Assembly (NCBI RefSeq): GCF_031769215.1
Contig: NW_026781979.1
Span: forward strand, 62,001-126,000
DNA length: 64,000 nt
Source: Ylistrum balloti
Taxonomy: Eukaryota
Direction of reading: 5' to 3'
Both the position numbers and the translations under genes were made by a program. Below, in pieces: positions 1-53,000 of this stretch. Numbering within the stretch: position 1 is the first letter of the stretch; each line of letters begins with the position of its first letter. Under the pieces are notes generated by a model that searched no databases, was not told where the DNA came from, and saw nothing but the letters and a program-made list of their open reading frames with translations.

Positions 1-1539
1 AATTTTACAAATTTCATAGCTAGAACAGATGATGGTATCGCAACCCCAATCTTTCCAGGTAAGATAGGTATCAAGATGTCTGTACAAATACAAGTCAAGC
101 ATACAAGGTGGCTTTGTCTCGGGATACTAGTGCTAAGGACATCCGCAAAACATAGCAAAATCAACATAGACTTTAGTTATATTTATGGTAAAATGTTTAA
201 AAACAAGGGGGCTGGACTGGGGTGAGAGGCCTGGTTGCAAAAGTATAGGGATGATATGGAAACGGTCAGGTTCAAATAAACCTGTAACAAATTAGCAGAC
301 CCATACTGCATCAGGTCAGACACCCCTCCATTACATTCATGGTTGTTTTCATAATAAAGCAGCTGAAACATCACAAAACCAGACAACATTCATGGAACTT
401 GCTTTGCTGGATTTTCTTTGGAAGTGTTGCATACTGGGTCTTTCCCATTTAACAAGCAGAGATGGCAAACATTTGCCGTCTCCACTAAGCTAGAGCACAA
501 TGTGCATTTTGGTTTTCTCAAAATCCAAGATACAAATACCCTTTTCCTTTATAAATGAAGACAGGTCACGAAAATGCTAACAGAAAATGGGCTTCAATTT
601 TATTTCTGTTCCCTCTTTTTTGCAAAAAGTGTAATTGTTTGTGCTTCAGAATTTCCAAGAATTTTGGTATGACAAAAATTTCTCCTTGGACATTTTCAAT
701 GCAAAGAAATCAAGATGATACTATTGGAATAGCCATAATCATCATATGATCAAAGATTTTTCTTTTTCCGTTTTTCATGTGGAAATATCAATAGTTTTCT
801 TTCTTTAATAGATTAGTTATCAAAAAAATGAAATTACTAAAGATTGATTTAGTCTTTTTCTCAATTTTTTGGGAAATAAAATTCTGGAGTCAAGAAGAAA
901 CAGCTAACAGGATCTGCCACCCGAGCATGACCAGCAACATTCCGGACTGCAGAGCAAATACAGCAACTGCTACGGCAGGATTTCGAACCCCTGGCAGTAC
1001 ACTCTGCAAGCCCCTCTTTCTCAGCTGTATTCAGCACACAGCATAACTAACACCTTACTGCTCCTACAGCACATGTGAAATAGAAGAAATCATGTGTTAA
1101 TGGAAATGATTGAAGGATTTATTTACAATAAAAATGTGGATGAAGAGTTGCACAATTCTAAAACAGTTCAAAGCATTCAGCATTTTTCTTCTCAAATATC
1201 TTTTCACATTACTTAGAATACATGCATTTTATTCAGTCATTTGATTTCTCAACTTGGAGATACTCCAAGCACAAACTTCTGAAATCGCCAAATCGTAATG
1301 GAACACTACTCTCCTCAATTTTATTCCATTTTTTTAGCAATGAACTTTATTAAAAACAAATGACTTAACGATGTGTGTGGATGAATGTATCTATAAAACT
1401 GGTGATAGTAACCTTTCACTGTCACAAGATCAGCTTGAATGATAGTATGTGCTCAGCCAGTCAATATGGACAGGATAAGCTATGTAGAATGTTGGTCATC
1501 ATTCTTTGACTTGTTATTGATGGTATCAAGATGAATATT

Positions 1540-2388
1540 TCAGTCGTCACCACAATCATCATCATGATTTCTGTGACTTGGTGACCTTGAAGGCGACTTA
1601 GAGATGTCCCTTGATCTGCTTCTGCTGCGACTAACACTCTTGCTCCTGCTATGACTACGGCTGTAACTCCTTGACCTAGAACGACTACGAGATCGTGACC
1701 TACTACGCCTCCTCCTTGATCGTGACCGTGATCTTCTTCCTCTTGACCGAGACCTAGATCTTGATCTTGACCTTCTGAAAAATAAAATAGTAAAATGAAA
1801 AAAATATTACGGTCTATTCTGATCTCACTTCTTTAACAATGATTTTCTACATACAGTTCCATTGTATAAACGAAATCATCCTTGTAATGTTTTTCGTTCT
1901 TTTTATTTTAAAATTAATGACAAATCTCTTCTATATCGTAAGGTAAAAAATCTATTATTGTAACTGTACTCATCTCAAATACGATTGTTCTATTGATAGA
2001 ATAAAGTTATTGATCAGTAAACGGTGCTGTTGTTGAACCCTTACCGTGACCGTCCATACCCATAGCTCCGGCGTTGGGGTGCCCTACTCCGGTGCGATTC
2101 GTTAGGACGTCCGTATCTCGCCATCTGTACTCTCAGTTCCCTTCCATCCATGATAGCGCCATCCATACTATCCAGTGCGTCTTCTGCGTCGCGTTTGTCA
2201 TAGTAACGTACGAAGGCGAATCCTCTACTTTCTCGAGTGAATCGGTCGCGGGGAATGTACACATCTCCAACGTCGCCATATTTTTCAAAAGCACGCCGCA
2301 GATCTTCCGGCGTCGTTCTGTAGGTCAAATTGTCCACTTTAAGGGATGCCATTCCCTCAATGTCGGGCGGTCCTCGACCATAACTCAT
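1540..2388 (-). CDS. SRSF2: Serine/arginine-rich splicing factor 2 (SC35), 2 coding exons, 192 aa
   Basis: Exon 1 is 2388-2045 ([25 protein letters not shown]... RRM with RNP1 RGFAFVRY), donor GTAAGG. Exon 2 is 1774-1540 after a tttcag acceptor and encodes an RS domain ending ...[11 protein letters not shown]. Total 579 nt, frame continuous. The N-terminus matches the characteristic SRSF2 [21 protein letters not shown]. Confidence 0.97.
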
Positions 2389-5700: not shown

Positions 5701-8700
5701 TGCATGTAATTACATTGTGATTTATATTGTAAAGCCTTATAGGGGGTAATTATTCTTTATTACAGCTTGCTGATAGGAAATATTTACAGTTACTATGTGC
5801 TGAAAGGAAGAGAAAACATTGACAGTAGCGAGAGGTTTCAACTGTTTGCTGGTTTAAGTGGGGCTGCTCTTGTTGGCGTACTTCTGTTTCTTACCCTACG
5901 TAATAGGCGCAACACAGACGCAGAAAACCTCATCAATCTGAACTCCAGGTATGCATGATAAAACATACAATAGTAAAAACTTAAATGTGGTCGTGATCCT
6001 ACCTCTATCATGTAGTATGTGCTTACTGGGTATGAAAAGTGTGACATAATCATGCTTTTAACCTTTGATAGTTTATTTGGAATATTACATTGAATGAAAA
6101 CATTTGCCATTATTGGACAAATATCCAGGCTTTTGCATTGAAATTGATGTAGATATTTAATGGTATTTGCTTAAACATCCAGGTTTTTAGGATGACCTAT
6201 AGCCATTGTGTTTTGTGAGTTGCTGTGTACTGTCCGTCATGCATAAACTTTCCATTCAAATGACATCTTTGTTAAATTGAATGACCTTGACTGACTTTCT
6301 AGGTCACATGTCATATATGTCAGAATCTTTGAATGACTTTTTCTCAACATCCAAAATGTCAATGGTGCTGACATTGGACTTGTTATATGCTTGGATGAAG
6401 GGCTACCAAGTTTTGTTAAAAATGAAGGACTTTGACCCACTTTCAAAGTTACAGATGTCAAATGTGTTAAAATGTTTATATGATGTCTTCGCAATAAACA
6501 AAAGATCCATGGTGATGATATTGAGCCTGTGATTGGCAGGGAGGAAGAGCTACCAATTTTGTAAAAATGAATGACGATCCATTTTCAAGGTGACAGGGGA
6601 CAAATGTGTAAAGGAATTTATAAAAAGACTTCTTGTCAACAACCAAAAGGCCAAAAGTGCTCATATTGAAGGCTACCAATTTGGTTCATATTATTGACCT
6701 TCACCATTTTTCAAGGTCACAGGTGTCAAAATCTTTTAAACGATTTCTTCTCAATAACCAAAAGGCTTAGGATACTGATATTGGGCCTGTGGCATGCTGG
6801 AATGAATGGTTACCAATTTTGTTCATGTTATCAACCTTTTCATTTATTAAAGGTCACAAGGGTCAAATGTGTTAAAATCTTCAAACAACTTCTTCTCGAT
6901 ATTGAAAAGGTCCAGGTTGTTGATATTAGTTCTTTAACATGAGTGGATGAAGGGCTACCAATTTACTCAAATAATTGACCTTGACCTGTGTTTAAGGTTC
7001 CTAGGGTCAAATGAGTTGACATCTTAAAATTTCTTTTTCAAAGCAATATGTTCACAGTAATGGCATTTGTGTAGTTGCTTGTATGAATATGATTTCAAGT
7101 TTGAAAAAATGTTTTCATGAACCAAAAATGTCTTCTTTGTAAGCTGTAGAATAGTTGACCAGTTTATTTTAGACGTATTTGGCCTCTTTCATATATAGGT
7201 ATTTATACTGTTAAGGTCTATGGGTCTCTTGTTTGAGAGACACAGACCCTCCTGCTGTTTTCTATGAGACATAGCATGTAAGATGCAAGTATGTGCATCT
7301 CTTAAAATAACACAATCAAGATTATATATCGACGATTCTCACAGATCCAGCCCTAAATATATGCATACTTCTACTTAGAATTGTCAAGGAGGTGTGGTTT
7401 CAGTTTGTCACAGTTGTAAGAAAATGCACCACAAATTTTCATAAGGATTTTTTTAGTGTTATATAAATATATAAAAAGTGATATTTAAAACTGTTGTCAT
7501 TTTCACTCTATTTGTGTTTCAGTGGTACACAATCAGAAGGTCCATTGTCTGCTGTTAGTAAGTATTGCGCAAAAGGGAAAGTAACAAAACAGTATTCAAA
7601 GTTTTGATACTTCAACACAAAGTAAACATCAAATGCATTAAACCATATCTGGTGATGACCAGTACCTACTAGATCAGGTGTAGATGAGTTGAAATAGTGA
7701 TATCATTTAGAAAATGTTTATTCATAGTGTGTATGTTATGGTATAGTATAATGACATTTAAAGTGGTTCAAATTAGAATCCAACAAAAACAACAAACTGC
7801 ATATGTAATCAACTTTTGACATAGCAATAGGTTAAAAAACCAGAATGCCAAAAACATCTTCAAGAAAGTAGATTTTAACCACACAGGATAAAAGCGTATT
7901 TGATTTCTTATTGATGTTTTGACGTATGTCTCTAGTTTGACAAAATACAAAAGTACATCTCAAAACAGTTTTTAATGATTTAAGGATATAAAAACAACTG
8001 ATTTGCATCTCCTAGTATTGACCACATTTTACTCGTTCTTAGGCAGGGCTGATTTCATATTGTCTGGTTATGACATCGTAATGCATCTATTTTCAGAAAG
8101 GTCTTTTCATCTTATGAAATCCCGTGAAATGCGTTTGCTGAGCGTTGCCATAGCCTATACAGGTAATGTATCCCTGATATTTATTGATAAAGAGTGTTTT
8201 TCATTCACAGCAAATGGCACTATTGAGATGGCTGTGTCATTTATTGGCCTATTACTTATAGTTATACCTCTAGATGGAAGTCTTCATCAGGCCAGTTCAA
8301 ATGGTGCCACTGAGCTAAAAATTGGTGGGAATGTTAAGGAAAGGTAGCCAACAAAGTGTTGTTATTTTATTACCTTGTCAGAACTTCGATACGGCAGTCA
8401 GGGAGGCCATTTTGTAAAATGATTGTGCAATCATGGTTTTCCTATGCAACACCTATTTCAAACTTCTCAAGTTCACCAGTCGGATTGAGCTCCAACTTTA
8501 CTGTCGAAAAATAAGTAACACTTGTCACAGTTTCCTACTCCTCACTAAAACTACCAGCTGCATTACGGAAAACAGCTAAGTAAGATTTCATTCAAAGTAG
8601 AAAAAAAAAACTTCTCCCTGTTGAAGGCATTATCAGGTCACAGATAATTGATAAACATAAACAACAGGGACAAATAAGTCAATGCCTACAAATATTACGT

Positions 8701-11700
8701 TACATGGCTGCTGTCATCAATCAGATTGCATAAAATCTTCAATGATAAGTTTATAAAGCTTACCTTCTAAGAGCATTTTTCATCCATGACTCAGCACTTG
8801 GATCTTTATTAATGTATTTGCCACTGTTTTATGTAAATTAAGAAATTGGATGTTATGCTAAAATTCAAGCTCCATCGTCATGTAACCTTTGCTTTAATGA
8901 ACAAATGAAATCCTCATCAGGGGACCAGCTTGTTTTAATTGCAGTATCATAATAAATTAAGCAGTCACTTTGTTATATTACCACACAGGTGTAGAACTGA
9001 CATTCTTCAGCGGAGTATATGGTTTTTGTATCTCCAACAATACACATTTTGGTGATGACTCCAAAGGGCTGATTGGAATATCAGGGATCTTTATTGGTGT
9101 AGGAGAAATTTTAGGTAAGTTGTTTTAAATTGGAAGTATTGGAGCAGTGACAGTTTATACTGATGACTTTTAACTACACTTGTGAAAAATGTATTCAGGG
9201 ATTGAAAAATTAGATAATAAAGCTTGAATTTGAAGTACTGTTTGAAATATCAATTTTGAACATGGATGATCCAATAGGTGGCGCCATGTTTGGACTGTTT
9301 GGGAAGAGGACCAACAAGTATGGACGAGACCCTATAGTGGTGCTGGGATATGTCTTACATATGGTGTGCTTTTTCCTCATCTTCATCAACATGCCAAGTG
9401 ATTCAACATTCAATCATACCTCATCTGAATCTGCAGCAACATATCTTAGTCCATCAAGGTAAGGTATACCATTTTACCAAGTCTTTCCAGGTAAACTGTA
9501 CCATTCTATCCAGTCTTTCCAGGTAAACTGTACCATTCTACCCAGTCTTTCCAGGTAAACTGTACCATTCTATCCAGTCTTTCCAGGTAAACTGTACCAT
9601 TCTACCCAGTCTTTCCAGGTAAACTGTACCATTCTACCCAGTCTTTCCAGGTAAACTGTACCATTCTATCCTGTCTTTCCAGGTAAACTGTACAATTCTA
9701 TCCAGTCTTTCCAGGTAAACTGTACCATTCTACCCAGTCTTTCCAGGTAAACTGTACTATTCTACCTGGTCCTTCCAGGTAAACTGTACCATTCTACTCA
9801 GTCCTTCCAGGTAAACTACACCATTCTACTCAGTCCTTCCAGGTAAACTACACCATTCTACTCATTCCTTCCAGGTAAACTACACCATTCTACTCAGTCC
9901 TTCCAGGTAAACTACACCATTCTACCCAGTCTTTCTAGGTAAACTGTACCATTCTACCTGGTCCTTCTAGGTAAACTACACCATTCTACTCAGTCCTTCC
10001 AGGTAAACTACACCAGTCTACCCAGTCTTTCCAGGTAAACTGTACCATTCTACCTGGTCCTTCCAGGTAAACTGTACCATTCTACCCAGTCCTTTCAGGT
10101 AAATTACACCATTCTACTCATTCCTTCCAGGTAAACTACACCATTCTACCTGGTCCTTCAAGGTAAACTGTACCATTCTACCCAGTCTTTCCAGGTAAAA
10201 TACACCATTCTACCCAGTCTTTCTAGGTAAACTACACCATTCTACCTGGTCCTTCTAGGTAAACTACACCATTCTACTCAGTCCTTCCAGGTAAACTACA
10301 CCATTCTACCCAGTCTTTCCAGGTAAACTGTACCATTATACTTGGTCCTTCCAGGTAAACTATACCATTCTACCCAGTCTTTCCAGGTAAACTGTACCAT
10401 TCTACCTGGTCCTTCCAGGTAAACTATACCATTTTACCCAGTCTTTCCAGGTAAACTGTACCATTATACCTGGTTCCTCCAGGTAAACTATACCATTTTA
10501 CCCAGTCCTTCCAGGTAAACTGTACCATTATACCTGGTCCCTCCAGGTAAACTATACCATTTTACCCAGTCCTTCCAGGTAAACTGTACCATTCTACCTG
10601 GTTCTTCCAGGTAAGCTGTACCATTATACCTCTGTCTGGTATCAGCCTACATAAATCCCTTTATGTACAGGTAAGCTACACCAGCATACCTAAGTCATTC
10701 TATGTAAGCTATTCCAAATTATTTCATTCAGGTAAATTATACCAAGTATAGATACAAAGTTATTGGTATTTTTTGTGGTCAATTGATGTTTGTTCAACAT
10801 TTTATCAATAGTTATTGAATGTGTACAAATGAGTTAATGAAGAAAAATGATATAAGCACACAGACGGATATTAACGAGCAGGTCTATACAATTTCCTTCT
10901 GTCTGCTGGTGCATCATTTTCTGAAGTGTATATCATGATCAGTTTTTTCTGCTATTGCCAAAAATCAAAATTTACATGCGGGTACATTTTGGCATAGCCA
11001 TTTGTTTAGTATGTACCGGGTATATATACCCTACACAACTACATTCATTAATTTTTCCTGTATTAGTCTGTCATTTAAATAAAATTGTAAACATATAGGA
11101 CAGATAGTAATTAAGATTTAAAAAGTTATTGTGATTTGTTGTTCTAATTATTCTTTTGAAATCTGTTTTTCAGTAAAGATGTTGCCATTCTGTGTTCCTT
11201 TTTACTTGGCTTTGGAGACAGTAGTTTTAATACGCAGGTAAGGTTTTCACATTTAATTGTATGTTATAGGTTACAAAAGTAAATATTTGGACTCCAACCT
11301 ACGTGCTTAAACTTTATCGAACATTCTTGGTGTAGTGCTGATACTTATTTCGAACTGGCATGTAATCTAATGAATAGAGTGGATACTGATATATATCGTA
11401 GGTAATATTTGGGGTCGGGTGGGACAGTGGTAATGCATTTGCCTTTCACCTAGCCATCTGGGGTTTGATTCCCAGAATGGATGTGATAAGGTAAGGGGTC
11501 ACCTGCCCGACCACGTGAGTTTTCCCTGGGTACTCTGGTTTCCTCCCACAATAAGACGCCTCTCATACTTACATCCGGGCTACTCAGAGTGATTAATATA
11601 AGTTGGAAAAACTTGCTTTGCAATTGTTGTAAGATAAATAATGTTTATTATTACATATTATCATTATTGTAGATAATGAAGCCTATTGTTGTCTAATATT

Positions 11701-50000: not shown

Positions 50001-53000
50001 CAGCACTAAGAACTTGGTTTTTAGGATATGGAAAATGTTACGTATTTCAATACCCAAAAACACATTTAACATGCTGGGCATGTAGGGATAAATTTGCAAT
50101 ATGATAAAATGAGCTTCTTGGATATCAAAGTCAGTCAGCTGCTATGAAACTAAAGTATCAAGGTTTCTGTAAAAAGAAATGTAAAGATTTTGTTATTTCA
50201 GTCTGATGAAGAGCCGAGTGAAGAGAAAACAAGCAAAAAAGGCAATGCAAAAACTTCACCAAAAAACAAAAAGGATTCAGAAAAAAAGAAAAAGCAATCG
50301 CCTAAGGAGAAAAAAGAGAAAACGCCTAATGTTAAAAAAGAAAGTAAGAAAACAAATTCCAAATCTAGAAAAGGATCAGCAGAAGCAAGTCGACCTGCAT
50401 CAGACACGGAAATTGACAAAACAGGTGAGAACTGTTCTCCAAAATGTGTAATTTGCTCGAATGACGAAGAAACTAAAAACTATCTTAAAAACCTTTGTAA
50501 TGTCCAAACCTATGTATTGTATGTTGGTACGTTTTGGGGATGAAAATACTGAAATATGCTTCTACTTGCATGATGTGGGCACCCAAATTTTTAGTCAAAT
50601 AATGATCTCAGGATGTCATGAAATCAATCTCAGAATATTCAGCTAACATATATAGTGATACAAAGTCCAAAACTTGTTAGTGTTCTCTTCAGAATTTGTT
50701 TTTATCTCATTTGTTGACTTTCAATTACCTTGTTCCCTTCAGTTGGAGGTACATTACAACTGATGAATGAAGCTGCCTAATATTTGTGTACTTCTTGTTT
50801 GTTTTCATTGACATTTGACATGTTCTACTGTATCATACACTTACCTATCCAATTAACCTAGATGTATTTATCTTGTGAACAAAAACAATTCTCATACTAG
50901 ACCTGATCAACAGTGTTCAGTGTTGAAATCAATCACACAACTAATTATTACCTATTAATGGCCAAGCCAGGTAATTGTGATTTTGGTGGGTCAAGTTTTC
51001 TAGAGTCAAGATATCTCGCTGTCACATTGTGTGCACTCTAACTGACATGACTTGAGGACCCAACTTTGTGTATGCAAGTGATTGGTTTATGGAGCACAGA
51101 ATGCACTGTAGGCATGGATATGTATATCAGGGCTCTTGATTTGCCAGATTTGGGGCCGAATATGCAAAATAGTATCTTTTTTTCCCAATTTAGACCCCAA
51201 GTTCTCCCAATTCTAAGGAAAACACCATTATTTGTCCCAATTCTAAGGGCCCCAGCCCCCAGTCCCAAAATGGGGTGTGAGGGCCCTGTATATTGTCAGA
51301 TGAATAAATGATAGTTCAGTTTAAAGATATGCTTCGTAAACACCAATAAGACTGATTTTGATAAATAATAAATTGCATCCTTAATCTGATAAGTCTCATT
51401 CCACAATCCGCATACAAATACGTAAACCCTAACTTCTACCAATAAACATGAAAATGGACATGTGCTCAAAAAACAATAATTTCATAATCTACATAATTTT
51501 TAATGTTCCTAACAGGCCACTGTCTACCAATCGTTAATTTCCTGTCTTGCTAGTTACTATCACATTTTGAAACACTTGTCCTGATTTTGGTTGATATTGA
51601 CTCTCATTGTTTGCATTAATTTATACAATGATTGCCATATTTATTTTTGTAATTCATAAGGAAATCATCAAATCCTTCTTGTGTCAGTTTTGCTTATCAG
51701 ATAATCCCCAAAATCAATGACAGCACTCGCACAGAATCTTCAATTTTTCCTTAAAGAAAAAAATGAAAAATCCTGTAGTCAATTTGGTCCTTGCATTTCT
51801 CAATAAAAATATGCTCCCATTGCAAGGGTTTTTACTGTATACATTCTCTTCCCTTTAAATTGGACATGTTGTAAAATGCTATACTTACTGTAAATAAGCT
51901 GTCTGGAGTGGCAAATGTTAGTAGTTAATGCTTGACTAAACTTGTTAATGTAGATTTCCAATAGACTCAATCTTCAGTTCAGTATGATAAGAACTAGTGA
52001 ATTAAGATGTGAAAGAGAAAAAATGTGATATATTAACATATTTGATGGTTTCAAACTAAGTTTTGAAGATTTAAATACAATATATTCCTCAAGAATTGAC
52101 ATGATGCCTAGCAGTTTTAGATAACATTGCTTTGTAACATTGATGAAATGTATGCTGTTGTGACAGGCACGTAGTAAGAACTATAACACGGAAATAATTT
52201 ACCTATTTTATTGTAAAGTCAAAATGATTGTTAAAATCTACCTGTGTTTGTAGTTAGACTAGTGGAAGGATGAAATGTGGATAAGTTAATAAAATCTACT
52301 TGTATTTGCAGTAAGGTTAGTGGAAGGATGAAATGTGGATAAGTTAGATTGATTAAAATCTACCTGTATTTGCAGTAAGATTAGTGGATGAAATGTGGAT
52401 AAGTTAAAGTGATTAAAATCTACCTGTATTTGCAGTAAGATTAGTGGATGAAATGTGGATAAGTTAAAGTGATTAAAATCTACCTGTATGTGCAGTAAGA
52501 TTAGTGGAAGGATGAAATGTGGATAAGTTAAAGTGTGTATTTGCAGTAAGATTAGTTAAATGTGAATAAGTTCGAGTGATTAAAATCTACCTGTATTTGC
52601 AGTAAGATTAGTGGAAGGATGAAATGTGGATAAGTTAATAAAATCTACTTGTATTTGCAGTAAGGTTAGTGGAAGGATGAAATGTGGATAAGTTAGAGTG
52701 ATTAAAATCTACCTGTATTTGCAGTAAGATTAGTGGATGAAATGTGGATAAGTTAAAGTGATTAAAATCTACCTGTATTTGCAGTAAGATTAGTGGAAGG
52801 ATGAAATGTGGATAAGTTAAAGTGATTAAAATCTACCTGTATTTGCAGTAAGATTAGTGGAAGGATGAAATGTGAATAAGTTCGAGTGATTAAAATCTAC
52901 CTGTATTTGCAGTAAGATTAGTGGAAGGATGAAATGTGGATAAGTTAAAGTGATTAAAATCTACCTGTATGTGCAGTAAGATTAGTGGAAGGATGAAATG

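What the first reader, a model, noticed from the sequence alone, without database searches (positions are those of the whole stretch)
895..1413. GC-rich, SSNG-dense island behind an acceptor in the SRSF2 3'UTR: candidate ancient autoregulatory (poison) exon
Seen: within AT-rich UTR, a minus-strand acceptor ttcttctatttcacatgtgctgtAG| (1065-1064) is followed by about 165 nt of GC-rich sequence packed with SSNG tetramers (GCAG, GCTG, CCAG, CCTG, CCGG, GGTG). A weak donor AAAG|GTTACT lies at 1413/1412, 127 nt after the stop. Known: the SRSF2 RRM binds SSNG, and human SC35 promotes splicing of a retained terminal 3'UTR intron through a conserved element just after its 3' splice site, causing NMD. 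From memory, the human acceptor context (ag|GCGCAGT...TAATGCTG...AGCTG...TGCAGAGTG) resembles this one (ag|GAGCAGT...TTATGCTG...AGCTG...TGCAGAGTG); this needs a real alignment. Inference: the feedback loop is shared between vertebrates and lophotrochozoans.
Basis: partly seen in the sequence, partly recalled or inferred. Interest (0 to 1): 0.7.

Follow-up and report, generated by a model that had tools for sequence, protein, structure and literature searches.

The report
Conserved regulated intron in SRSF2 3'UTR
After its stop codon, a scallop splicing-factor gene (SRSF2) has an optionally removed intron followed by a stretch packed with that factor's own binding motifs; this is the layout the human gene uses to limit its own level, and it also appears in amphioxus, snails, a worm and insects, so the self-control circuit is probably ancient.

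Summary
The minus strand carries a two-exon SRSF2 ortholog with its stop at 1542-1540. A weak donor (AAAG|GTTACT, 1413|1412) lies 127 nt after the stop. The acceptor is at 1065-1064. The next 170-186 nt are the densest SSNG, and above all GCWG(U), stretch in the whole 64 kb.

RNA contigs of a related scallop join 1413 to 1063 (GT..AG, 349 nt skipped) in two independent studies, alongside unspliced forms.

The block 878-1134 is 98.4-98.6% identical to Pecten maximus. The coding sequence is 88-91% identical and the flanks are unalignable.

The same layout recurs in another bivalve, Sinanodonta, Aplysia, Patella, an annelid and amphioxus: donor AAAG|GTTA, an AT-rich intron, an acceptor often followed by GAGCAGT, then a GCWG cluster. 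An eel, Tribolium and a mayfly have it in modified form.

The island interior cannot be aligned between phyla.

Best reading: this is the ortholog of the vertebrate SC35 terminal-intron autoregulatory unit. SRSF2 dependence and NMD are inferred, not shown.

It is not a repeat, a tRNA relic, a structured RNA or a cassette exon. The scan had not noted it elsewhere.

The parts
2045..2388 (-). SRSF2 exon 1 (ATG at 2388; RRM)
   Evidence: Translation. PDB 2lea SRSF2 RRM at E = 6e-54. 99% identical to Pecten maximus SRSF2-like protein P0001.
1775..2044 (-). Intron 1 (strong donor CACG|GTAAGG)
   Evidence: Sequence. Spliced out in RNA contigs of relatives (joints 1770->2044/2051).
1540..1774 (-). SRSF2 exon 2 coding part (RS domain; stop TGA 1542-1540)
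   Evidence: Translation; sequence.
1413..1539 (-). Proximal 3'UTR: 127 nt between the stop and the 3'UTR donor
   Evidence: 83.5% identical to Pecten. The same spacing is 124-126 nt in Pecten, the annelid and amphioxus, and 81-94 nt in bivalve X, Aplysia and Patella.
1407..1418 (-). Weak 5' splice site TGAAAG|GTTACT (last exon base 1413)
   Evidence: Used in the RNA joint 1062->1412 (cut +1; CT..AC on the + strand is GT..AG on the minus strand) in runs X1 and X17. AAAG|GTTA recurs at the same relative place in 8 lineages.
1064..1412 (-). Alternatively removed 3'UTR intron, 349 nt, AT-rich (GC 0.28)
   Evidence: The joint skips 349 nt. Unspliced contigs coexist in the same runs.
1064..1134 (-). 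Conserved 3' end of the intron (TTAAC branch-like site, pyrimidine tract, AG 1065-1064). It also holds UGUAAAUAAA at 1127-1118
   Evidence: 98.6% identical to Pecten. 32 nt up to and across the acceptor are identical in a distant bivalve.
878..1063 (-).
   Evidence: 98.4% identical to Pecten, against 88-91% for the CDS. 3-5 differences per 257 nt in four RNA runs. Top motif window of the 64 kb. RNA continues colinear with the genome beyond 878.

Best explanation
The island is the first 186 nt of the terminal 3'UTR exon of a scallop SRSF2 gene. It lies directly behind a 349-nt intron that sits wholly after the stop codon and is removed from only part of the transcripts.

Proposed mechanism:
1. 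The donor is weak (GTTACT, with T at +3 and C at +5), so the intron is retained by default.
2. The exon start carries a dense array of GCAGU/UGCUG-type sites, a subset of SSNG. It opens with GAGCAGUAAGG, which matches 10 of 11 positions of the SC35 SELEX motif GAGCAGUAGKS. These sites act as exonic splicing enhancers bound by SRSF2 itself.
3. When SRSF2 is abundant, it binds the array and drives removal of the intron.
4. The spliced mRNA then has an exon junction 127 nt past the stop codon. It is probably degraded by NMD or otherwise made less productive, which closes a negative feedback loop.

Shown here: the gene identity, the splice sites and their use in RNA of a related scallop, the coexistence of spliced and unspliced forms, the extreme conservation of the block, the motif content, and the recurrence of the layout across phyla.

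Inferred: SRSF2 binding, SRSF2-dependent activation, and decay of the spliced form.
For: Gene identity.

Splicing: the joint 1062->1412 (cut +1) skips 349 nt with GT..AG on the minus strand. It appears in X1 (a run on record as RNA) and in X17, which come from two studies.
- The 57-nt junction contigs have the length expected for a splice bubble in a k=31 graph (60 minus 3 ambiguous bases).
- Contig depths add up at the donor in X17: 317 unspliced + 148 spliced, against 454 for the CDS contig.
- The same runs have intron 1 spliced out, so they are RNA.

Conservation: the block 878-1134 has 3-5 differences per 257 nt in four runs, while exon 2 has 42-53 per 359. Against Pecten the block is 98.4-98.6% identical, the CDS 88-91%, and the flanks 40-70%.

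Motifs:
- SSNG is 21-22 against 14 +/- 2.9 in shuffles, with strand asymmetry of 21 against 9.
- Pooled over 8 taxa, GCAGT is seen 32 times against 1.5 expected, TGCTG 27 against 2.4 and GCTGT 25 against 2.4.
- In all 10 loci the first 170 nt after the acceptor is the top GCWGU/UGCWG window on either strand.
- The published SC35 motif list includes GAGCAGUAGKS, GGGUAUGCUG and UGCYGYY (PMC1526722).
- AGGAGCAGT occurs once per locus in the scallop, Pecten, Aplysia and amphioxus, each time exactly at the acceptor.

Donor: AAAGGTTA is unique in the Pecten, bivalve X, Sinanodonta and eel loci, and always lies 247-570 nt before the acceptor.

Geometry: the stop-to-junction distance is 81-127 nt in all seven single-intron taxa, above the 50-55 nt NMD rule.

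Vertebrate precedent: SC35 activates its terminal intron through multiple low-affinity sites in the first 60 nt of a highly conserved terminal exon (PMC2831310). The eel terminal exon is built from the same units.
Against: - No binding, minigene or NMD data exist for any invertebrate.
- The RNA evidence comes from a relative (Pecten-like), not from the window's own species, and from assembled contigs with 27-30 nt on each side of the joint.
- Two other runs show only the unspliced form.
- The spliced form makes up roughly 30-40% of steady-state contig depth. That is high for an efficiently degraded NMD target.
- Junction-dependent NMD is not established in molluscs, and it is dispensable in flies and nematodes (general knowledge).
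- GCWG is only one of the SSNG classes.
- The island interior cannot be aligned between phyla, so independent recruitment of similar motifs is not excluded.
- No unusually stable stem-loop like the human one is predicted (z from -0.4 to -0.9).
Confidence: 0.65

Rival explanations
1. The 3'UTR intron is real and regulated, but the GCWG array is read by a different factor: another SR protein, or a YGCY or UG-rich binder such as MBNL-, CELF- or TDP-43-like proteins. Alternatively the outcome is not NMD. Splicing could instead remove AU-rich, Pumilio-like and poly(A)-signal sequences from the UTR, changing stability, translation or 3'-end choice.
For: - GCWG dominates, while GGNG and CCNG are not enriched.
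- UGUGUG (1040-1035) and UAAGG (1057-1053) lie in the island. In human, TDP-43 and hnRNP H bind the homologous exon and antagonise SC35 (PMC2831310).
- The intron holds UGUAAAUAAA inside its conserved 3' end.
- The spliced form is abundant at steady state.
Against: - The array sits in the SRSF2 gene itself in every phylum sampled.
- It opens with a near-match to an SC35 SELEX motif.
- The vertebrate counterpart, built of the same units, responds to SC35 and not to ASF/SF2.
- The junction is always more than 55 nt after the stop in the single-intron taxa.
Confidence: 0.22
2. The similarity between phyla is convergent. Each lineage independently evolved a 3'UTR intron with an SRSF2-motif exon, as is thought for most SR-gene poison events. 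The scallop element would then be a lineage-specific analog rather than a homolog of the vertebrate unit.
For: - Island interiors do not align between phyla. Scallop against eel gives z = 0.5 and scallop against amphioxus gives z = -0.65.
- Vertebrates and insects have an extra cassette exon and a donor at the stop codon.
- Published work stresses independent origins of SR unproductive splicing (PMC4379411; PMC7726792).
Against: - The same rare donor, AAAG|GTTA with T at +3, recurs in molluscs, the annelid, amphioxus and the eel. It is unique in several loci.
- The same exon start, AG|GAGCAGT, is found in the scallop, Aplysia and amphioxus.
- The stop-to-donor distance is nearly the same in the scallop, annelid and amphioxus (127, 126 and 126 nt).
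- MFSD11-SRSF2 synteny confirms that the loci are orthologous.
Confidence: 0.1
3. The block is not an RNA regulatory element of SRSF2. It could be an interspersed repeat or tRNA-derived SINE, a DNA-level enhancer, a small ORF, or a structured non-coding RNA.
For: - GGTTCGAAATCC (989-978) resembles a tRNA B box.
- ORFs of 39-72 aa overlap the block.
Against: - No tRNA is found and there is no Rfam match in the block.
- There is no second copy in the 64 kb.
- The block sits at the orthologous position in Pecten, and RNA contigs run through both of its borders.
- The motifs are strongly strand-specific and start exactly at a splice acceptor that is used.
- Folding energy is not unusual.
- The island interior turns over between bivalve lineages, so no peptide is conserved.
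Confidence: 0.03

Closest known systems
Human/mouse SRSF2 (SC35) terminal retained intron with its SC35-dependent enhancer exon (Sureau et al. 2001; Dreumont et al. 2010, PMC2831310)
   Same: - Same gene.
- An intron wholly in the 3'UTR that is retained or removed.
- A block of extreme conservation straddling the 3' splice site: -43 to +89 at 100% between human and mouse, and -71 to +186 at 98.4-98.6% between two scallop genera.
- Many GCAGU/UGCUG-type sites at the start of the terminal exon. This was seen in the eel ortholog used as the vertebrate stand-in.
- The spliced form has a junction downstream of the stop.
   Different: - The scallop has one 3'UTR intron, with its donor 127 nt after the stop. 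Vertebrates have a donor about 13 nt after the stop, a cassette exon, and then the terminal intron (eel locus).
- The enhancer interior cannot be aligned with the fish sequence.
- No exceptional stem-loop is predicted.
- SRSF2 dependence, the TDP-43/hnRNP H antagonism and NMD are untested in the scallop.
Ancient poison cassette exon of SRSF5 (Lareau and Brenner 2015, PMC4379411)
   Same: It is an unproductive-splicing unit of an SR gene that is conserved across animal phyla, against the general pattern of independent origins.
   Different: The SRSF5 unit is a cassette exon with an in-frame stop inside the coding region. Here the element is a 3'UTR intron and a terminal exon. That study did not cover SRSF2.
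Ultraconserved elements of vertebrate SR genes (Bejerano 2004; Lareau 2007; Ni 2007, as cited in PMC4379411)
   Same: It is a non-coding block in an SR gene, overlapping an alternative splice site, that is much more conserved than the neighbouring coding sequence.
   Different: It is 257 nt at about 98.5% identity between scallop genera, not 200 nt or more at 100% between human and rodent. It was frozen independently within the scallop lineage, because the interior differs in other bivalves.

Membership tests
SRSF2/SC35 3'UTR terminal-intron autoregulatory unit | Lies in the 3'UTR of an SRSF2 ortholog | tested here: met
   MFSD11/UNC-93 is the head-to-head neighbour, as in Pecten, Aplysia, Patella and amphioxus.
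SRSF2/SC35 3'UTR terminal-intron autoregulatory unit | The intron lies entirely after the stop codon and is removed in some transcripts and retained in others | tested here: met
   a GT..AG joint skipping 1064-1412 in X1 and X17, with unspliced contigs in the same runs. This is RNA of a related scallop, not of the window's own species.
SRSF2/SC35 3'UTR terminal-intron autoregulatory unit | Exceptionally conserved block straddling the 3' splice site | tested here: met
   98.4-98.6% for the block, 88-91% for the CDS and about 40% for the flanks.
SRSF2/SC35 3'UTR terminal-intron autoregulatory unit | Cluster of SC35-type enhancer motifs at the start of the terminal exon | tested here: met
   Motif level only. 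GAGCAGUAAGG matches 10 of 11 positions of GAGCAGUAGKS.
SRSF2/SC35 3'UTR terminal-intron autoregulatory unit | SRSF2 protein binds the exon and activates removal of the intron | not testable with these tools
   Needs EMSA or CLIP, and a minigene with SRSF2 dosage.
SRSF2/SC35 3'UTR terminal-intron autoregulatory unit | The spliced isoform has a junction more than 50-55 nt after the stop and is degraded by NMD | tested here: inconclusive
   The geometry is met: 127 nt here and 81-126 nt in six other taxa. Decay is not testable, and the spliced form is about 30-40% of contig depth.
SRSF2/SC35 3'UTR terminal-intron autoregulatory unit | The enhancer is embedded in a long stem-loop (probed in human) | tested here: inconclusive
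   the MFE z-score is -0.4 (90 nt) and -0.9 (170 nt) in the scallop, and about 0 in the eel. Prediction gives no signal in either.
SRSF2/SC35 3'UTR terminal-intron autoregulatory unit | Sequence homology to the vertebrate element | tested here: inconclusive
   The boundary motifs are shared: AAAG|GTTA and AG|G(A/C)GCAGT. The interior does not align with the eel (z = 0.5). No human sequence was used.
Poison cassette exon | Internal exon flanked by two introns that brings a premature in-frame stop | tested here: not met
   The island lies after the normal stop. RNA contigs run on colinear with the genome past 878, and there is no donor there.
Interspersed repeat / tRNA-derived SINE | Multiple dispersed copies; tRNA-like A and B boxes | tested here: not met
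   There is no other copy in the 64 kb and no tRNA or Rfam hit. The position is orthologous in Pecten. Genome-wide copy number was not testable.

The most novel reading that the evidence does not exclude
The SRSF2 3'UTR feedback unit predates the split of protostomes and deuterostomes. The ancestral form is the simple one kept by scallops, snails, annelids and amphioxus: one intron, a donor AAAG|GTTA about 126 nt after the stop, and an exon opening with GAGCAGU followed by a GCWG array. Vertebrates and insects later added a cassette exon upstream. SRSF2 would then be the second SR gene, after SRSF5, whose unproductive splicing is conserved across phyla. The unit would be maintained by motif density with free turnover of the interior, yet frozen to near-ultraconservation within single lineages.
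Probability: 0.55. Interest if true: 0.78.

Novelty: new member of a known kind. Interest (0 to 1): 0.68.

Why it matters
Autoregulation of SR splicing factors by unproductive splicing is a textbook case in vertebrates. The current view is that most of these events arose independently and recently, with SRSF5 as the exception (PMC4379411; repeated in PMC7726792). For SRSF2, conservation had been traced only from human to Xenopus (PMC2831310), and a Drosophila study saw no SC35 poison isoform (PMC7726792).

Seven searches of the held paper library found no report of an invertebrate SRSF2 3'UTR intron.

If the layout found here in molluscs, an annelid, amphioxus, a fish and insects is homologous, the SRSF2 feedback loop is a bilaterian inheritance. 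It would give a compact natural system of a 349-nt intron and a 186-nt exon. That system could be used to ask three questions:
- How does a splicing factor read its own concentration?
- Does junction-dependent NMD operate in lophotrochozoans?
- Why do such elements freeze to near-identity within lineages while turning over between them?

Tried and rejected
- **tRNA-derived SINE or tRNA relic**, suggested by GGTTCGAAATCC at 989-978. ARAGORN finds nothing in the window, Rfam has no hit in the block, blastn finds no second copy in the 64 kb, and the block is at the orthologous place in Pecten.
- **Structured RNA.** MFE z-scores against dinucleotide shuffles are unremarkable in all ten taxa; the extreme is -2.0 in Aplysia.
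- **Small ORF.** Only mechanical ORFs of 39-72 aa overlap the block, and the interior is not conserved in other bivalves.
- **Weak C/D-box snoRNA-like Rfam hits** at 1498-1568 (E = 5.2 and 2.9, far below gathering): taken as chance.
- **Direct alignment of the island to a vertebrate.** Local and anchored global alignments to the eel are not above shuffles. Between phyla only scattered pairs exceed shuffles, and these are driven by shared GCAGT/TGCTG words.
- **Cassette-exon reading.** The loose ends of RNA contigs beyond 878 equal the Pecten genomic continuation, so no splice occurs there.
- **Logan contigs L002-L011 and L018-L021** (bivalve X) retain intron 1 and are colinear with each other, so they say nothing about splicing. 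L024 ends before any island.
- **Sureau 2001** (PMC145484) is not held in the paper library.
Full report
**What is in the window.**
The minus strand of 1-2600 carries a two-exon gene.
- Exon 1 (2388-2045) encodes an RRM that matches the solved SRSF2 RRM (PDB 2lea) at E = 6e-54, about 80% identical.
- Exon 2 (1774-1540) encodes an RS domain ending at TGA 1542-1540.
- The protein is 99% identical to Pecten maximus 'SRSF2-like', but the DNA is only about 85% identical to that species.
- The window contains no N.

**Check of the observation.**
- The donor is TGAAAG|GTTACT, with the last exon base at 1413, 127 nt after the stop.
- The acceptor AG is at 1065-1064 behind a pyrimidine tract.
- The next 170 nt have GC 0.51 against 0.28 in the intron.
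- They hold 21-22 SSNG, against 14 +/- 2.9 in shuffles (p about 0.008). The opposite strand holds 9 and the last 170 nt of the intron hold 2.
- It is the SSNG-richest stretch of the minus strand in the 64 kb.

The signal is sharper than SSNG. GCWGU/UGCWG words reach 12-14 per 170 nt against a background of 0.54. The next best window has 5 on that strand and 8 on the other.

**Is the acceptor used?**
I laid Logan contigs of four runs on 1-2600. All four come from relatives, and their differences from the window are those of another species. The contigs' loose ends beyond 878 equal the Pecten maximus genomic sequence.
- In X1 (on record as RNA) and X17, which belong to two studies, a contig joins 1413 to 1063. 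It skips 349 nt with GT..AG on the minus strand.
- The junction contigs are 57 nt long. That is the length a splice bubble gives in a 31-mer graph, so the short sides (27 and 30 nt) follow from the method.
- Contigs of the terminal exon start at 1065, the branch point of the graph.
- In X17 the depths add up at the donor: 317 unspliced plus 148 spliced, against 454 for the coding contig.
- The same runs have intron 1 removed, so they are RNA.
- X6 and X12 show only full-length mRNAs with the 3'UTR intron retained.

The intron is therefore alternative. Roughly a third of the steady-state signal is spliced in two runs; this is a rough figure, since contig depth is one number per contig. RNA continues colinear with the genome for at least 255 nt past 878. 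The island is thus the start of a terminal exon, not a cassette exon.

**Conservation within scallops.**
The four runs show 3-5 differences over 878-1134 (257 nt), against 42-53 over the 359 nt of exon 2. Identity to Pecten maximus by segment is as follows:

| Segment | Identity to Pecten maximus |
|---|---|
| Exon 1 | 90.7% |
| Exon 2 | 87.7% |
| Intron 1 | 39% |
| Stop to donor | 83.5% |
| 5' part of the 3'UTR intron | 70% |
| Last 71 nt of the 3'UTR intron | 98.6% |
| First 186 nt of the terminal exon | 98.4% |
| Downstream of the block | about 40% |

The edges of the conserved block are sharp. This mirrors the human-mouse block of 132 nt (-43 to +89) at the SC35 terminal 3' splice site (PMC2831310).

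**Conservation beyond scallops.**
I fetched SRSF2 loci of other animals through their proteins. The upstream head-to-head MFSD11/UNC-93 gene is present in Pecten, Aplysia, Patella and amphioxus, which confirms orthology. Seven taxa share one layout:

| Taxon | Stop to donor (nt) | Intron (nt) | Donor | Acceptor and exon start |
|---|---|---|---|---|
| Scallop (window) | 127 | 349 | TGAAAG\|GTTACT | tag\|GAGCAGTAAGG |
| Pecten maximus | 124 | 358 | same as the window | same as the window |
| Unidentified bivalve ('bivalve X', Logan contigs) | 83 | 247 | TAAAAG\|GTTAAT | 32 nt across the acceptor identical to the scallop |
| Aplysia | 81 | 412 | AAAAAG\|GTGCTT | tag\|GAGCAGTAAAT |
| Patella | 94 | 327 | AAACAG\|GTTACT | cag\|GAGCTGAGTAA |
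| Annelid (Paralvinella) | 126 | 499 | GAAAAG\|GTTAAT | cag\|GCGAGCAGTAG |
| Amphioxus | 126 | 480 | AAAAAG\|GTTATT | tag\|GAGCAGTTAG |

- Sinanodonta has GTGAAAG|GTTATA 1061 nt after the stop, about 380-400 nt before its island.
- The second tandem SRSF2 copy of the annelid repeats the pattern.
- The eel, Tribolium and the mayfly Cloeon have a donor at or within 13 nt of the stop, then a short cassette exon, then a terminal intron. The eel terminal intron runs from TAAAAG|GTTATT to tag|GCGCAGTTG, and the Tribolium one from TGAAAG|GTATTT to cag|CAGGCGG.
- The Tribolium junctions are those of the deposited gene model, which wrongly reads these UTR exons as coding.

**Statistics on the shared features.**
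- In all ten loci (2-64 kb), the first 170 nt after the acceptor is the best GCWGU/UGCWG window on either strand.
- Pooled over eight non-redundant taxa, GCAGT occurs 32 times (1.5 expected), TGCTG 27 (2.4), GCTGT 25 (2.4) and TGCAG 20 (1.5). Each is present in 7-8 taxa.
- AGGAGCAGT occurs exactly once in the scallop, Pecten, Aplysia and amphioxus loci, always at the acceptor.
- AAAGGTTA occurs once in the Pecten, bivalve X, Sinanodonta and eel loci (0.1-0.7 expected per locus), always 247-570 nt before the acceptor.
- A T at donor position +3 is rare among animal introns (general knowledge), so a shared GTTA donor is a telling character.

**What is not conserved.**
The interior of the island does not align between phyla.
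- Anchored global alignments of the first 75 nt give z = 0.5 for scallop against eel and -0.65 for scallop against amphioxus. Scallop against Aplysia or the annelid gives 1.7-1.8, and only scallop against Patella is clearly significant at 6.1.
- Local alignments are no better, and where they exceed shuffles they consist of runs of the shared words.
- I tested it with a fish ortholog only.

**Mechanism.**
In human, SC35 activates removal of its terminal 3'UTR intron through several low-affinity sites in the first 60 nt of the conserved terminal exon. [quoted passage not shown] The spliced 1.6/1.7-kb mRNAs are NMD-sensitive (PMC2831310; PMC7726792).

The eel exon is made of the same GCAGU/UGCUG units as the invertebrate islands. 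A published list of SC35 sites includes GAGCAGUAGKS, GGGUAUGCUG and UGCYGYY (PMC1526722). The scallop exon opens with GAGCAGUAAGG and contains UUAUGCUG.

I therefore read the scallop unit as follows:
1. A weak donor keeps the intron in.
2. SRSF2 bound to the array recruits the splicing machinery to the acceptor.
3. The spliced mRNA carries a junction 127 nt after the stop and is down-regulated.

The junction lies 81-127 nt after the stop in all seven single-intron taxa, always beyond the 50-55 nt limit. That fits NMD but does not prove it.

Points against: the spliced form is abundant, junction-dependent NMD is unproven in molluscs, and GCWG could be read by another protein. No unusual RNA structure is predicted.

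**Alternatives excluded.**
tRNA or SINE relic, Rfam family, repeat, peptide and cassette exon.

The checks available here argue against that for this block, though genome-wide copy number could not be measured.

**Novelty.**
Seven searches of the paper library and four papers read gave no report of an SRSF2 3'UTR intron outside vertebrates.
- Lareau and Brenner (2015) treated SRSF4/5/6.
- Neumann et al. (2020) saw no SC35 poison isoform in Drosophila.

The scallop unit is a new member of a known kind. The cross-phylum layout, if homologous, is the new point.

Noticed in passing
window 1118-1127 (-); L005 about 985-1000; L014 about 7510-7525; L025 about 10080-10090: UGUAAAUAAA (a Pumilio-type UGUAAAUA overlapping AAUAAA) lies in the 98.6%-conserved last 71 nt of the 3'UTR intron. 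The same 12-mer, TTGTAAATAAAT, is present in the distant bivalve. Patella and amphioxus also have AATAAA 50-60 nt before the acceptor. It may be an intronic poly(A) site competing with splicing, or chance in AT-rich sequence.
   Followed up: partly
window 1053-1057 and 1035-1040 (-): UAAGG and UGUGUG lie in the first 30 nt of the terminal exon. In human, UAAGG is the hnRNP H site and UG runs are TDP-43 sites that antagonise SC35 on the homologous exon (PMC2831310). The annelid and bivalve X islands also have UG runs.
   Followed up: no
window 978-989 (-): GGTTCGAAATCC resembles a tRNA T-arm or B box. ARAGORN and Rfam find no tRNA, and the block is single-copy in the window.
   Followed up: yes
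window 1498-1568 (-): Weak C/D-box snoRNA-like Rfam hits (snoR160 at E = 5.2; snoZ107_R87 at E = 2.9) span the stop codon. ATCAATAAC and ATGATGA in this proximal UTR also occur just after the Sinanodonta stop codon. Probably chance.
   Followed up: no
L022 6001-7649 (Tribolium P0111); L017 6001-9007 (eel P0084): The deposited gene models read the 3'UTR cassette and terminal exons as coding sequence, in a shifted frame. The result is odd C-termini. These are annotation artefacts that nonetheless record the UTR splice junctions.
   Followed up: partly
L015 1427-3150 and 6001-10100: Paralvinella palmiformis has two tandem SRSF2 copies about 4.5 kb apart. Each is followed by AAAGGTTA (2368 and 9570) and a GCWG peak (2858 and 9924).
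   Followed up: partly
   Followed up: partly
window 52430-52970 (+): Three neighbouring 170-nt windows hold 6-8 GCWGU/UGCWG words each. This is the only other local enrichment in the window and lies on the other strand. I did not examine it.
   Followed up: no
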